Positions 12,071 to 15,325 of a stretch of DNA of 64,000 nucleotides are shown piece by piece (positions within the stretch are counted from its first letter, which is position 1; each line of letters begins with the position of its first letter). Source of the stretch: Polymyxa betae A26-41 (Eukaryota; Protista; Endomyxa: Phytomyxea). Under the pieces are notes generated by a model that worked only from the letters and a program-made list of their open reading frames with translations, made no database searches and had not been told where the DNA came from. The stretch spans positions 2,985-66,984 of the forward strand of contig RBZT01000562.1 of assembly GCA_003693705.1 (NCBI GenBank), given 5' to 3'. Both the position numbers and the translations under genes were made by a program.

Positions 12071-12323
12071 CTGCAAGTCGAGAAACCCTAACCTGACATA
12101 AACCAACCCTTGTTGGCTCTGTATTCCGTCTCATCCCATTCCATAACATCTCTTCGATGGCCGAGCCGTACTGCCCCCCATGAGCCGTTTGACCACGAGG
12201 CCCCCAGTTGTTTATTAGGACAGTGGACTGTGGATGGACATAGGCTACCCCCGTGATGCGCCACGGCGTCCGAACGAGCCGCCACCAAACTTCTATCGAC
12301 ATCCCATCCCCAACACACACATA

Positions 12324-12875
12324 ATGTTGGCCGTGTTCGTCATCCTCGCGCTGATGCTGACGTCGACGGTGATGGGGCAGCCGAGGGCGAGGGCGCGGCC
12401 GCGCGCCCGCAACATCCTCTCTGATCGCTACATCGTCAATGCCCTGTTCCAAGCTATTCAGGCTCAGGAACAACTCGACGACGACGACCCCGACCTGGCG
12501 CCGAGCCCTCTCCTGGACCATCTGGCTCGCTCGCTATCCGAACGGCTCCTCCTAAGTCATGACCGGAACAGGACCGGTTCCACAATTTTCACAGAATCCA
12601 GTCACGACGACAACGACGACGAGGAAGAGGTCGTCGTCTATCACGTGGACGATCGCGAAGGGGCCGGACCGGAGCGCGCCCGCCAGTATCTGAGCGACAA
12701 TCGCAACGTCCTGTGCGGCATCTGCCTGGACGAAGTGAAGCCGGAGGCGACCAGCTGTCCGCACGCCGCCTCCCATTGTTTCTGTATCGCATGCGTCGCC
12801 CCGGCCCTGGCCACGACGAGATCGCGGAAGCATCTGTGCCCGGTCTGCAGGCAGCCCTGGCAGCACTCAACCTGA
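12324..12875 (+). CDS. Secreted RING-finger protein (candidate E3-ligase effector)
   Basis: Signal peptide MLAVFVILALMLTSTVMG, no TM, C-terminal CGIC...CPH...HCFCIAC...CPVC; intronless. Confidence 0.8.
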   Translation: MLAVFVILALMLTSTVMGQPRARARPRARNILSDRYIVNALFQAIQAQEQLDDDDPDLAPSPLLDHLARSLSERLLLSHDRNRTGSTIFTESSHDDNDDEEEVVVYHVDDREGAGPERARQYLSDNRNVLCGICLDEVKPEATSCPHAASHCFCIACVAPALATTRSRKHLCPVCRQPWQHST

Positions 12876-12882
12876 ACACATC

Positions 12883-12898
12883 AAAACCCTAAAACCCT
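12883..12898 (+). promoter_or_regulatory. Telo-box-like element AAAACCCTAAAACCCT about 40 bp upstream of the P4H start
   Basis: Motif seen directly. A regulatory role is inferred by analogy with the plant telo-box AAACCCTA. Confidence 0.45.
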
Positions 12899-12935
12899 GA
12901 CTAAACTGTTTACCGCTCGTCACACTCGCTTTCGC

Positions 12936-14679
12936 ATGTTTCGCTCGGTCGTAGCCGCCGGCATCGTTGTCTCCATCGCCGTCTATTACCGGCGCCAGCC
13001 GCCTCCCGAGGATCAGCACGACCCCGTCCCAGTCCACGTGACGTTCGTCAACAACGTCGCCGACGACGACCTCGAGCTGTTCTGGTGGGATGCGGACGCC
13101 GCCATCGAGCGGTCGATGGCGCAGATGGGCCGCGACGGCGGCCGATTCGAATCGGAGACGTACGCGGACCATATCTGGACGTTCAGGAACCTCCAAGGCG
13201 TCCTGATCCGCAGCGTCGTGGTCGACGCCGGCGATGGGCCGCAGCGATTCGCGGCCGTCGTCGATCGCGCCCCGATGGACGAATACGCGAGGCGGACGGG
13301 ACGCCCATGGCTCAACGTCTGGCCCCGAGACCCGGTCCGATATCATATGTGGGGCGAGGGGCCCATCGGCCGGGCCGAGACCGTCGAGGTCGGGTACGGC
13401 CATTGGCTGGGCGAAGGCGGCCCCGATTGGGATGAATTGGGTGAGAAAACTCGAGTCGTTTTCGAAGAAAAAAACCCAAAAGTATTTTACGGGCACTTTT
13501 CTCAACCGCTTTTTTTCAGTGATTTTGTGTTTGATTGGTTTTGGATGAATAGAGTGAGAAAAATTCGACTCGTTTTTCGAAAAAAAAACGGAAAATTTAA
13601 GGGCAGTTTTTTCAAAAGTTTTCTTGGATGATATTATGTTTTATTCGTTTGGCTTTAGCGCAGAAGATGATGACGGTAACGATCACGACTGAGGCGGAGT
13701 CTCCGCGGCTTGTCTCACTGGCCGGGTTCATGTCGCCGGCCGAATGCGACCAGTTCATTGCCGAGGCGAACGCTCGCGGCGGCTTCCAACGCAGCCTGAC
13801 GACCGAGTATGATCATTGTCGTGGCCATCGCCCCGTCTAACGCTGCGCAGTAAAGGTATCGTAAGCGAGTCGAGGACCAGCTCGACCATCTGGCTGGATA
13901 CCGCCGAGACACCGCTCTTCGAGCACGTCTCGCGGCGCATGTTCGCCCTGATGCGCATCGATTATACGCCGGAGCGCGCACGCCGCATCACCGAATCGTT
14001 CCAGCTGCTGCATTACGGACCCAACCAGCAATACAAGGTTTATAGGGTTTTAGGGTTTGTATCGCTCCCCTTTTTGGCGTTCTTTTCGGTCATCACCGTT
14101 AATTGCTTCCTGAGAGGGCCTGACTGGCTGATTGATTGACGGTGTGATGTGGTCGTACAGCCCCATACGGATTGGTTCGACGTGGACTCGGAAGAGAACG
14201 CCCACTACCTGTCAGTGCTGAAAGGCCGTAATCGGTTCGCGACCTTCTTTCTGTATCTGAGCGATGTCGATGAGGGTGGCGGTCAGTTTATTGTTGCGGC
14301 GTGGCGCAACCTCCTCGCCTGACTCAGTTTCGTTACAGAGACAGCATTCCCTCTGGCGAAAGTAAAAACGCGTTTTTGGCAAACACCGACACATTAGGGT
14401 TTAGGGTTTCGATTAGGGTTTTGAGTATGAAGGGACCTCCGAGGAAGGCTGCCAGAAAGGCCTGCGCATGCGACCGAAGAAGGGCGACGCGATCATCTTC
14501 TATTCGATGATGCCAGGTAACGTGGGCATCGGACTGGCTCCATGTGGTAACGCTATAATGGGACAGATGGGAATCTGGATCCGCAGAGTCTCCATGCCGG
14601 CTGTCCGGTCATCCGAGGCGAGAAATACGCCGCTAATATCTGGTTCTGGGAGCCGACCCGATTCGGCCCGGATCCATAG
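12936..14679 (+). CDS. Prolyl 4-hydroxylase (2OG-Fe(II) dioxygenase) with N-terminal signal anchor and VHL-beta-like domain
   Basis: Introns 13441-13658, 13807-13850, 14038-14160, 14362-14416 and two more short ones give PRLVSLAGFMSPAECD...RTSSTIWL...HYGPNQQYKPHTDWF...NRFATFFLYLSDVDEGGETAFP...PKKGDAIIFYS...SLHAGCPVIRGEKYAANIW (HxD...H...K). The N-terminal part carries VHVTFVN...FWW...TYADHIWTFR. Confidence 0.88.
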
Positions 14680-15325
14680 TGCTATAAAACAGACCAATTC
14701 AAACCCTAACCACCGGCATGGTGGACGGCGCTCTTTACGCTAGGGCTGGGCGCAGACCCCGAGGGTCCATGAACTTCCTTCTGGGATTGATTCGCTCTTG
14801 AAGGAGATCGTTGAGATTCAACCCAGCAGAGGGCTGAAAAACCTGGTTTGGAAGGGCTGGAACCTGTTGGCCCAATCCTGCAGGGATGATCAACCTAACA
14901 CTGTTTCGATCTCATGCTGGTCACTCAGCTTCTATTTCATACTGACTATCAGATCGGACATTCGTCTATGTAAGCGTTCTGCAGCAGTATTGTTTGTTTC
15001 TGCTTTCATAGTGCTGTATTGACGCCGGTTATGTTGCATTTGCAGTATTCGGTCCTGTTGTCTGATAGGGTCCTATAAACAAATGATTTATTATGAAAAT
15101 TGTTGTGAGTTTCCTTTTTCCGGTTACAAAATCGGAATTTTTTTTATTTGTTTCAACCTTTTTTTGTTACTGCTGAGAAGCGGGCTGCTGTCCTGTGGCA
15201 ACAATTGCGCAGTTACGCAGTTTGTGTGGGACAGGTTGCGCGACCTAAATCCCGTACGGACCCCGTGCGGGCCGAATATCCATCCATCCCTTTCTGCAGA
15301 TCTGCAATCTCCCCGTCAGCCAACG

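What the first reader, a model, noticed from the sequence alone, without database searches (positions are those of the whole stretch)
12936..14679. Prolyl-4-hydroxylase fused to a VHL-beta-like domain: a possible hydroxyproline writer and reader in one protein
Seen: after a signal anchor, exon 1 encodes PVHVTFVNNVADDDLELFWW...ETYADHIWTFRN, and the spliced C-terminus is an intact P4H (HTD...H...K). Established: the pVHL beta domain has the pattern V.FxN...V..W...SYxxHxWxFR, and its W88/S111/H115/W117 form the pocket that binds HIF hydroxyproline. The equivalent W, T, H and W appear to be retained here. Inference: the enzyme may bind its own hydroxylated product, giving processive or spreading hydroxylation of Pro-rich secreted proteins, or it may be a compact O2-sensing module in an organism not expected to have HIF. 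No VHL alpha/BC-box is visible, so it is probably not an E3 adaptor.
Basis: partly seen in the sequence, partly recalled or inferred. Interest (0 to 1): 0.8.

Follow-up and report, generated by a model that had tools for sequence, protein, structure and literature searches.

The report
VHL-like domain fused to prolyl hydroxylase
A plasmodiophorid-like protist gene encodes a secretory-type prolyl 4-hydroxylase whose N-terminal part has the VHL-beta fold, which animals use to recognise hydroxyproline; this pairing recurs across Rhizaria, I found no paper on it, and it suggests the fold's link to (hydroxy)proline predates animal oxygen sensing.

Summary
Window 12936-14679 (+) is one seven-exon gene of 398 codons, collinear with Plasmodiophora brassicae PBRA_005650. 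Exon 1 encodes a hydrophobic N-terminus, a VHL-beta-fold domain (residues 29-108) and a conserved ~55-residue linker. Exons 2-7 encode a collagen/plant-type prolyl 4-hydroxylase with the HxD...H...K set intact.

Pfam itself misses the VHL domain. Three other tests support it:
- Profile-profile comparison with Pfam-positive VHL-beta domains gives 98.4% probability, E 8e-15.
- An AlphaFold model matches pVHL 68-152 at Z 11.6, rmsd 1.4 A over 77 residues.
- Every top Foldseek hit is pVHL.

Four of the five hydroxyproline-pocket positions are kept (W50, T75, H79, W81). The Tyr98 position is Met, and it is never Tyr in any P4H-fused member. These residues are also the signature of the whole superfamily, bacterial members included, so they do not prove hydroxyproline reading.

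The fusion occurs in Plasmodiophora, Spongospora, chlorarachniophytes, Reticulomyxa and probably diatoms. This genome has three such paralogues. There is no VHL alpha domain or BC-box, and the enzyme is not PHD-type, so an HIF-like O2 switch is unlikely.

The likeliest role is a peptide-docking module for Pro/Hyp-rich secretory substrates. Splicing could not be checked with RNA reads. Other first-stage notes of this scan record the same fusion here and on another piece of this genome.

The parts
12936..12995 (+). N-terminal hydrophobic segment (residues 1-20): a signal peptide or signal anchor
   Evidence: Read directly from the sequence; no predictor was run. Orthologues have clear type II anchors (P0001, P0010, own paralogue L001) or cleavable-looking signal peptides (chlorarachniophyte P0031/P0035/P0036, diatom P0043).
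13020..13259 (+). VHL-beta-fold domain (residues 29-108). Pocket-equivalent codons: N40 13053-13055, W50 13083-13085, M61 13116-13118 (pVHL Tyr98 position), T75 13158-13160, H79 13170-13172, W81 13176-13178
   Evidence: AF2 model pLDDT 93-95 over residues 31-100. VIA-align Z 11.6, rmsd 1.4 A, 77 residues aligned to pVHL 68-152. Foldseek top hits are all pVHL. hhalign against Pfam-positive VHL-beta repeats 98.4%, E 8e-15. Family profile against PDB puts pVHL first, E 0.002. Residue table.
13260..13439 (+). Conserved linker module (residues ~109-168) between the VHL-beta domain and the catalytic domain; Y117, W125, P130, P133 and G145 are invariant in the family
   Evidence: Alignment A1. On its own it finds P0008, P0014, P0015, P0023 and P0024. 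pLDDT is low when exon 1 is folded alone but 84-92 in the full-length model of orthologue P0001.
13441..13658 (+). Intron 1, AT-rich. It consists of a tandem ~113-bp duplication that includes the last 14 nt of exon 1 and the GTGAGA donor, so a second donor copy sits at 13554
   Evidence: the repeat finder; sequence. Which donor is used was not tested with RNA.
13659..13806 (+). Exon 2: start of the P4H domain
   Evidence: tblastn to P0001 residues 242-294, 49% identity.
13851..14037 (+). Exon 3: P4H core, with the RTS..W motif shared by the whole family
   Evidence: tblastn; invariant R302/T303/S304/W308 columns in A4.
14161..14281 (+). Exon 4: Fe(II) ligands His (14164-14166) and Asp (14170-14172) of the HxD motif
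   Evidence: H358 and D360 are invariant in A4. Weak PDB hits to bacterial and human P4H.
14339..14361 (+). Exon 5: a 23-nt micro-exon (ETAFPLAK)
   Evidence: Gap-free match to P0001 across both junctions.
14417..14516 (+). Exon 6. The acceptor AG at 14415-14416 lies inside a telomere-like TTAGGG unit
   Evidence: 64% identity to P0001 405-437 without a gap.
14567..14679 (+). Exon 7: distal His (14593-14595), 2-oxoglutarate-binding Lys (14623-14625) and the TAG stop
   Evidence: PDB phmmer: Chlamydomonas P4H-1 2JIG, E 6e-5. Pfam 2OG-FeII_Oxy_3, 16.6 bits on this exon alone.

Best explanation
This is one gene for a prolyl 4-hydroxylase of the collagen/plant (P4Hc) type that works in the secretory pathway. 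Its catalytic domain is preceded by a VHL-beta-fold sandwich and a conserved linker. The linker appears to hold the two domains in a fixed arrangement. The VHL-beta domain most likely acts as a peptide-docking module. It would bind a proline or hydroxyproline in a Pro-rich secretory substrate, using the same face that pVHL uses for HIF hydroxyproline, and keep the chain near the active site. It would then play the part that the peptide-substrate-binding domain plays in animal collagen P4H. Shown: the gene structure by homology, the fold, homology to VHL-beta, retention of four of five pocket positions, the catalytic residues, and recurrence of the fusion in other lineages. Inferred: lumenal location, peptide binding, and any preference for Hyp over Pro.
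For: Fold and homology. Phmmer with exon 1 hits proteins that carry strong Pfam VHL repeats.

Pocket positions W50, T75, H79 and W81 match pVHL W88, S111, H115 and W117.

P4H type: the orthologue P0001 hits Cr-P4H-1 at 9e-32, followed by bacterial, human alpha-2, P4H-TM and PBCV-1 P4Hs, and no EGLN at E<=0.001. The window's own exon 7 hits 2JIG.

Single-chain fusion in relatives, some from transcript assemblies: Plasmodiophora P0001 and P0037, Spongospora P0010, Bigelowiella MMETSP transcript P0031, Amorphochlora P0035, Reticulomyxa P0015.

Three paralogues in this genome.

Rigid arrangement: the full-length model of P0001 has pTM 0.71 and linker pLDDT 84-92.

Independent association of the fold with proline chemistry: large bacterial clusters fuse Pfam VHL to DPP-IV/S9 proline-specific peptidases.

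From my own knowledge, not checked here: pVHL also binds hydroxylated collagen IV, and collagen P4H alpha subunits carry a separate peptide-substrate-binding domain.
Against: No binding data exist.

The Tyr98 equivalent is lost in every fused member (M/L/Q/I/K). W117 is Phe outside the plasmodiophorids. One Plasmodiophora paralogue (P0037/P0006) has also lost the S111, H115 and W117 equivalents.

The conserved N/W/H residues could be structural.

Bacterial VHL-beta domains are also fused to sulfatases, a sialate O-acetylesterase family, LRRs, an M56 peptidase and calpain. That pattern fits a generic binding module as well as a proline-specific one.

Pocket geometry and its distance from the Fe site could not be measured, because the tools give no model coordinates.

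Splicing is not verified by RNA.
Confidence: 0.55

Rival explanations
1. Strict writer-reader. The VHL-beta domain specifically binds 4-hydroxyproline made by its own catalytic domain, so hydroxylation spreads processively along Pro-rich repeats through positive feedback. This is a special case of the best explanation.
For: The two residues that hydrogen-bond the Hyp hydroxyl in pVHL (S111, H115) are kept as T75 and H79. They are conserved in most fused members, together with the aromatic walls W50 and W81. The fusion with a Hyp-producing enzyme is a classic Rosetta-stone hint.
Against: The Tyr98 equivalent is systematically lost. The same residues are conserved in bacterial domains fused to enzymes unrelated to Hyp. 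In collagen P4H, the analogous docking domain favours unhydroxylated substrate (my own knowledge, not checked here). No measurement exists.
Confidence: 0.25
2. The domain is a generic beta-sandwich that does not read peptides. It could be a glycan-binding (CBM-like), oligomerisation, or ER/Golgi-retention module that happens to descend from the VHL-beta superfamily.
For: Bacterial relatives are fused to sulfatases, SASA esterases, LRRs and several peptidases in Planctomycetota and Verrucomicrobiota, contexts typical of accessory binding modules. One paralogue has a degenerate pocket yet is retained. Hyp-rich proteins are usually O-glycosylated (my own knowledge).
Against: The pocket-lining positions are among the best conserved columns in the fused clade. 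Proline-specific peptidases are the commonest bacterial partners in the Atlas rows.
Confidence: 0.2
3. A cytosolic O2-sensing unit analogous to PHD-VHL-HIF, possibly working with the RING gene 60 bp upstream.
For: P4Hs use O2. A RING-type ORF ends at 12875, 60 bp before the ATG.
Against: The catalytic domain is collagen/plant-type, not EGLN-type. All members start with a signal peptide or anchor. No VHL_C/BC-box is present in the protein or the genome. The RING neighbour is not conserved: in Plasmodiophora the upstream genes are an Arf GTPase and a PP2C. The genome is compact, so 60 bp spacing means little.
Confidence: 0.03
4. Two adjacent genes wrongly joined: a small secreted VHL-beta protein (the 231-codon ORF 12936-13631) and a separate P4H.
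For: The exon 1 frame stays open through most of intron 1. A second donor copy at 13554 would give a truncated product with the VHL-beta domain and linker only (inference). No RNA reads were obtained.
Against: The P4H part would lack a start with a targeting signal. The linker in exon 1 is conserved only together with P4H domains and becomes ordered only in the full-length model. Orthologous single ORFs exist, including MMETSP transcript assemblies. All catalytic residues are intact.
Confidence: 0.04

Closest known systems
pVHL beta domain (human VHL residues ~63-154; Pfam PF01847)
   Same: Same fold: Z 11.6, rmsd 1.4 A over 77 residues covering pVHL 68-152. Homologous by profile-profile comparison. 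Equivalents of N78, W88, S111 (as Thr), Y112, H115, W117, F119 and R120 are retained.
   Different: No alpha domain, BC-box or Cul2 box, so it is not an E3 adaptor. The Tyr98 equivalent is Met. It is preceded by a signal peptide or anchor and is therefore presumably lumenal. It is fused to an enzyme. Pfam's own model does not detect it.
Chlamydomonas reinhardtii P4H-1 and plant type II membrane P4Hs (PDB 2JIG, 3GZE)
   Same: Best solved relative of the catalytic part. Same HxD...H...K set. Same secretory-pathway organisation with an N-terminal anchor. Expected to act on Pro-rich secreted proteins.
   Different: Those enzymes have no VHL-beta domain and no such linker ahead of the catalytic domain; some plant and algal ones carry a C-terminal ShK domain instead.
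Animal collagen prolyl 4-hydroxylase alpha subunit (peptide-substrate-binding domain plus catalytic domain; PDB 7ZSC for the catalytic part)
   Same: Same logic: a catalytic P4H domain preceded in the same chain by a separate module that docks Pro-rich peptides. The catalytic domains are homologous.
   Different: The animal docking domain is a helical TPR-like fold unrelated to VHL-beta, and the enzyme works as an alpha2-beta2 tetramer with PDI (my own knowledge). Nothing here indicates a PDI partner.
Bacterial VHL-beta domains fused to DPP-IV / S9 prolyl peptidases (Planctomycetota, Verrucomicrobiota)
   Same: The same superfamily domain attached to an enzyme that acts at proline residues. 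The full W/Y/T/H/W pocket signature is present.
   Different: The partner is a hydrolase, not a hydroxylase, in bacteria. Their function is also unstudied as far as my searches show.

Membership tests
VHL beta domain superfamily (Pfam PF01847) | Match to the Pfam VHL model above its gathering score (21 bits) | tested here: not met
   Exon 1 gives no Pfam hit even at E<=10. Relatives do: own-genome paralogue L001 26.4 bits, P0024 26.4 bits, Spongospora P0010 20.9 bits, just below the cut-off.
VHL beta domain superfamily (Pfam PF01847) | Homology to bona fide VHL-beta domains by profile methods | tested here: met
   hhalign of the P4H-fused N-domains (A1) against Pfam-positive repeats (A3): 98.4%, E 8e-15, 77 columns. 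A1 profile against PDB: pVHL is the top family, E 0.002. Phmmer with exon 1 retrieves VHL-repeat proteins.
VHL beta domain superfamily (Pfam PF01847) | Seven-stranded beta-sandwich superposable on pVHL 63-154 | tested here: met
   AF2 without templates, pLDDT 93-95. Z 11.6, rmsd 1.4 A, 77 residues, pVHL 68-152. Caveat: the input alignment contained Pfam-positive VHL domains.
VHL beta domain superfamily (Pfam PF01847) | Signature / hydroxyproline-pocket residues W88, Y98, S111, H115, W117 | tested here: inconclusive
   Four of five are kept (W50, T75, H79, W81). Y98 is replaced by M61, and is never Tyr in fused members. Pocket geometry could not be inspected because no coordinates are available.
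pVHL-type E3 substrate receptor | Alpha domain with BC-box / Cul2 box (Pfam VHL_C, PF17211) | tested here: not met
   No VHL_C hit on exon 1, P0001 or P0010. Best match in the whole genome is E 0.35, 15.9 bits, below the cut-off.
pVHL-type E3 substrate receptor | Hydroxyproline-dependent binding of a substrate degron | not testable with these tools
   Needs binding assays.
Collagen/plant-type prolyl 4-hydroxylase (P4Hc; 2OG-FeII_Oxy_3) | Fe(II) triad HxD...H plus a 2-oxoglutarate-binding Lys | tested here: met
   His 14164-14166, Asp 14170-14172, His 14593-14595, Lys 14623-14625. The same columns are invariant in A4.
Collagen/plant-type prolyl 4-hydroxylase (P4Hc; 2OG-FeII_Oxy_3) | Sequence homology to solved P4Hs rather than to HIF PHDs | tested here: met
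   Exon 7 against 2JIG, E 6e-5. Orthologue P0001 against 2JIG/3GZE 9e-32, 3ITQ, 7ZSC, 6TP5 and 5C5T, with no EGLN chain at E<=0.001. The window's exons are too short for Pfam: only exon 7 hits, at 16.6 bits.
Collagen/plant-type prolyl 4-hydroxylase (P4Hc; 2OG-FeII_Oxy_3) | Prolyl 4-hydroxylase activity on peptidyl proline | not testable with these tools
   Needs an enzyme assay.

The most novel reading that the evidence does not exclude
The VHL-beta fold is an ancient reader of proline/hydroxyproline in peptides that predates the animal HIF system. In SAR protists it was fused to secretory P4Hs, making a self-reading, processive write-and-read enzyme for Pro-rich wall or matrix proteins. In bacteria it was fused to proline-specific peptidases. 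Animals later recruited it, with an added alpha domain, as the Hyp-degron receptor.
Probability: 0.25. Interest if true: 0.8.

Novelty: new variant of a known kind. Interest (0 to 1): 0.66.

Why it matters
The HIF/PHD/VHL axis is usually described as an animal invention that is absent from protists (PMC9618697, citing Loenarz 2011). In this gene, the fold that reads hydroxyproline in animals is covalently joined to an enzyme that makes hydroxyproline. That happens in a distant eukaryotic supergroup and in a different cell compartment. The architecture recurs across Rhizaria and probably in diatoms. If the domain binds Pro or Hyp peptides, three things follow:

- It gives an evolutionary origin for pVHL's ligand specificity.
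- It gives a new example of read-write coupling outside chromatin.
- It gives a small, tractable Hyp/Pro-binding module to characterise.

It also points to Hyp-modified secreted proteins in plasmodiophorids. These organisms are crop root pathogens whose wall and surface biochemistry is poorly known.

If the domain does not bind such peptides, the finding is still a clean new domain architecture, and an example of a divergent VHL-beta clade that Pfam misses.

Tried and rejected
- **Direct searches with exon 1.** Pfam and PDB-sequence searches gave nothing for VHL. Only profile and structure methods showed the relationship.
- **Word-indexed homologue searches.** Searches on the N-domain of P0001 and P0014 found almost only the queries themselves. 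The exhaustive representative search and a full-length profile search were more useful.
- **Bacterial gene neighbourhoods.** Two VHL-repeat proteins (P0012, P0020) sit on contigs too short to say anything about P4H linkage.
- **Intron conservation with Plasmodiophora.** The comparison gave no clean pattern.
- **First guess for the exon 6 acceptor (14426).** Rejected in favour of 14417.
- **RING-P4H functional module.** Rejected for lack of synteny and because of topology.
- **Collagen as substrate.** Unlikely: a survey reports no collagen domains in Rhizaria (bioRxiv 10.1101/2021.10.08.463732).
- **Literature.** Four searches found no description of a VHL-beta/P4H fusion or of bacterial VHL-peptidase fusions. 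This covers open-access text only.
- **Joined protein.** Exons were searched by reference, and the full-length fold was done on the natural orthologue P0001.
Full report
**Gene structure.** Window 12936-14679 on the + strand has GC-rich coding blocks separated by AT-rich stretches with GT-AG ends. Closing the frame gives seven exons:
- E1 12936-13440
- E2 13659-13806
- E3 13851-14037
- E4 14161-14281
- E5 14339-14361
- E6 14417-14516
- E7 14567-14679

That is 1197 nt, or 398 codons plus TAG. A local tblastn of the best database relative, P0001 (Plasmodiophora brassicae PBRA_005650, 478 aa), against the region aligns all exons in order (E 3e-32 for E1, 2e-67 for the rest). The junctions E2/E3, E3/E4, E4/E5, E5/E6 and E6/E7 are gap-free against P0001. 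The two split codons reproduce its Asp residues. I first placed the E6 acceptor at 14426. Homology showed that three more codons belong to the exon, so it starts at 14417. The E1/E2 junction lies in a length-variable stretch of the family. It therefore rests on frame closure and splice signals only.

Every search used single exons by reference or natural proteins from the databases.

**Exon 1 alone shows no VHL match in direct searches.** Exon 1 (168 residues) gave no Pfam family at E<=10 and no VHL chain by phmmer against PDB sequences. An exhaustive phmmer against 1.8 billion representatives gave 29 hits. The best were:
- P0001 (49% identity over residues 22-158), which is a full P4H.
- P0010 from Spongospora subterranea, which carries both Pfam VHL (20.9 bits) and 2OG-FeII_Oxy_3.
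- Proteins with strong Pfam VHL-beta repeats, E 1e-15 to 1e-40.

**Profile and structure methods establish the VHL-beta fold.**
- A profile of ten P4H-linked N-domains (A1) ranks human pVHL first among all PDB sequences, at E 0.002.
- The same profile aligns to a profile of 31 Pfam-positive VHL-beta domains (A3) with 98.4% probability, E 8e-15, over 77 columns.
- An AlphaFold2 model of exon 1, made without templates, has pLDDT 93-95 for residues 31-100.
- Foldseek against PDB returns pVHL chains for every listed hit, 72 of them at E<=0.001.
- VIA-align gives Z 11.6, rmsd 1.4 A, with 77 residues aligned; model 29-108 covers pVHL 68-152, which is essentially the whole beta domain.

**Pocket residues.** I mapped positions from the HMMER alignment to pVHL and the family alignment.

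| pVHL residue | Window residue |
|---|---|
| N78 | N40 |
| W88 | W50 |
| Y98 | M61 |
| S111 | T75 |
| Y112 | Y76 |
| H115 | H79 |
| W117 | W81 |
| R120 | R84 |

Four of the five residues that enclose HIF hydroxyproline are retained, including the two that hydrogen-bond its hydroxyl (established pVHL-HIF structures; my own knowledge). Two cautions apply:
- The same residues (W/Y/T/H/W) are almost invariant in the non-fused, mostly bacterial domains. They are the family signature, not a special feature of this protein.
- The P4H-fused clade has systematically lost the Tyr98 equivalent (M, L, Q, I or K). It has Phe for W117 outside the plasmodiophorids. One Plasmodiophora paralogue (P0037/P0006) has also lost the S111, H115 and W117 equivalents.

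I could not inspect the pocket in three dimensions because the tools return no coordinates.

**The rest of the protein.** After the beta domain comes a ~55-residue stretch that is better conserved than the domain itself. Y117, W125, P130, P133 and G145 are invariant. On its own it finds further P4Hs. It is poorly modelled when exon 1 is folded alone. In a full-length model of the natural orthologue P0001 (pTM 0.71) it reaches pLDDT 84-92. This suggests it packs against the catalytic domain and fixes the position of the beta domain.

The catalytic part is collagen/plant-type:
- P0001 hits Chlamydomonas P4H-1 (2JIG/3GZE) at 9e-32, followed by Bacillus, human alpha-2, P4H-TM and PBCV-1 P4Hs. No EGLN/PHD chain appears at E<=0.001.
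- The window's own last exon hits 2JIG at 6e-5.
- The HxD, distal His and Lys are all present.

There is no VHL alpha domain. VHL_C is not found on exon 1 or the orthologues, and the best match in the whole 27.1-Mb assembly has E 0.35.

**Topology.** The protein begins with a short hydrophobic segment. Orthologues have either a clear type II anchor (P0001, P0010, own paralogue L001) or a cleavable-looking signal peptide (chlorarachniophytes, diatom). I ran no predictor, so lumenal placement of both domains is an inference. It is consistent across the family and with plant P4Hs.

**Distribution.** The fusion is present in:
- Plasmodiophora (two paralogues, P0001 and P0037)
- Spongospora (P0010)
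- Bigelowiella (P0014/P0031, an MMETSP transcript)
- Amorphochlora (P0035)
- Reticulomyxa (P0015, a fragment)
- several marine environmental eukaryote sequences (P0038 and others)

A Skeletonema diatom cluster (P0043/P0045/P0068) has a weaker N-terminal match (local HMM E 1e-4 to 8e-7), followed by a ShK domain and a P4H. ESM Atlas structure rows show two diatom Fe2OG clusters matching the domain. I rate the diatom case as probable.

In the window's own genome there are three VHL-beta/P4H genes: the window copy, C686 (L001/L003, Pfam VHL 26.4 bits) and C675 (L006). There is also a 301-residue membrane protein with two VHL-beta domains on C839 (L004).

The best hits, at 41-49% identity, are to Plasmodiophora and Spongospora. 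The organism is therefore a phytomyxid-like rhizarian distinct from both. From memory, the assembly size would fit Polymyxa, but I did not test this.

**Bacterial context.** The Atlas rows and P0028 show large bacterial clusters (Planctomycetota, Verrucomicrobiota) in which Pfam VHL is fused to DPP-IV/S9 peptidases. From general knowledge, those are proline-specific enzymes. This is a second, independent association of the fold with proline chemistry. The domain is also fused to sulfatases, SASA esterases, LRRs, an M56 peptidase and calpain, so a generic binding role cannot be excluded.

**Mechanism.** The most likely reading (0.55) is that the beta domain docks a Pro or Hyp residue of a Pro-rich secretory substrate and holds the chain near the active site. 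That is analogous in logic, though not in fold, to the peptide-substrate-binding domain of collagen P4H.
- The strict writer-reader version, with Hyp-specific binding and spreading, is a sub-case at about 0.25.
- A non-peptide or purely structural role is at about 0.2.
- An HIF-like oxygen switch is at about 0.03. The enzyme type, the topology and the missing alpha domain all argue against it, and the upstream RING gene is not syntenic in Plasmodiophora, where Arf and PP2C genes sit upstream.
- Two separate genes is at about 0.04, given the single ORFs in relatives, including transcript assemblies.

Collagen is an unlikely substrate, because a survey found no collagen domains in Rhizaria (bioRxiv 10.1101/2021.10.08.463732).

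**Novelty.** Four full-text searches found no description of this architecture. The field's reviews state that the HIF/PHD/VHL pathway is absent from protists (PMC9618697). Both domains are known, and automatic annotation may already show the pair for some relatives. I therefore class it as a new variant of a known kind: a real, conserved architecture, absent from the papers searched, with a testable functional implication.

Other first-stage notes of this scan record the same fusion on this stretch (s1-673993) and on another piece of this genome (s1-696225).

Noticed in passing
window 13427-13652: Intron 1 is essentially a tandem duplication of ~113 bp. It starts 14 nt inside exon 1 and copies the GTGAGA donor, giving a second donor at 13554. 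Using that donor would keep the exon 1 frame open to 13553 and then hit a stop three codons into exon 2. The product would be a truncated protein with the VHL-beta domain and linker only. This is inference; no RNA was checked.
   Followed up: partly
window 14038-14059, 14390-14416; also 12883-12899 and 14700-14711: Telomere-like TTTAGGG units lie inside introns 3 and 5 in G-strand sense. They touch the intron 3 donor and contain the intron 5 acceptor (the AG of a TTAGGG unit). C-strand copies (AAACCCT) flank the gene just upstream of the ATG and just after the stop. The 14-mer with one mismatch occurs twice in the window, against 0.02 expected by chance.
   Followed up: partly
window 12234-12875 (+): A 213-codon ORF with an N-terminal hydrophobic segment and a C-terminal RING-like Cys/His cluster ends 60 bp before the P4H start codon. 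The adjacency is not conserved in Plasmodiophora.
   Followed up: partly
G000:C686 (L001/L003), G000:C675 (L006), G000:C839 (L004/L005): The genome has two more VHL-beta/P4H paralogues. C686 is the counterpart of Spongospora P0010, at 41% identity. C839 encodes a 301-residue membrane-anchored protein with two VHL-beta domains and no P4H (Pfam VHL 36 bits).
   Followed up: partly
P0028; ESM Atlas clusters: In Planctomycetota and Verrucomicrobiota, Pfam VHL-beta domains are often fused to DPP-IV/S9 prolyl peptidases. They are also fused to LRRs, sulfatases and SASA esterases. I found no paper on this.
   Followed up: partly
P0043, P0045, P0068 (Skeletonema cluster): Diatom P4Hs with this layout: signal peptide, divergent VHL-beta-like domain, ShK domain, P4H. 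The W88 equivalent is not Trp there.
   Followed up: partly
window 15083 onward (+): The next gene downstream looks by eye like an N-acetyltransferase 10 / Kre33-type RNA cytidine acetyltransferase N-terminus. I did not check this with any tool.
   Followed up: no
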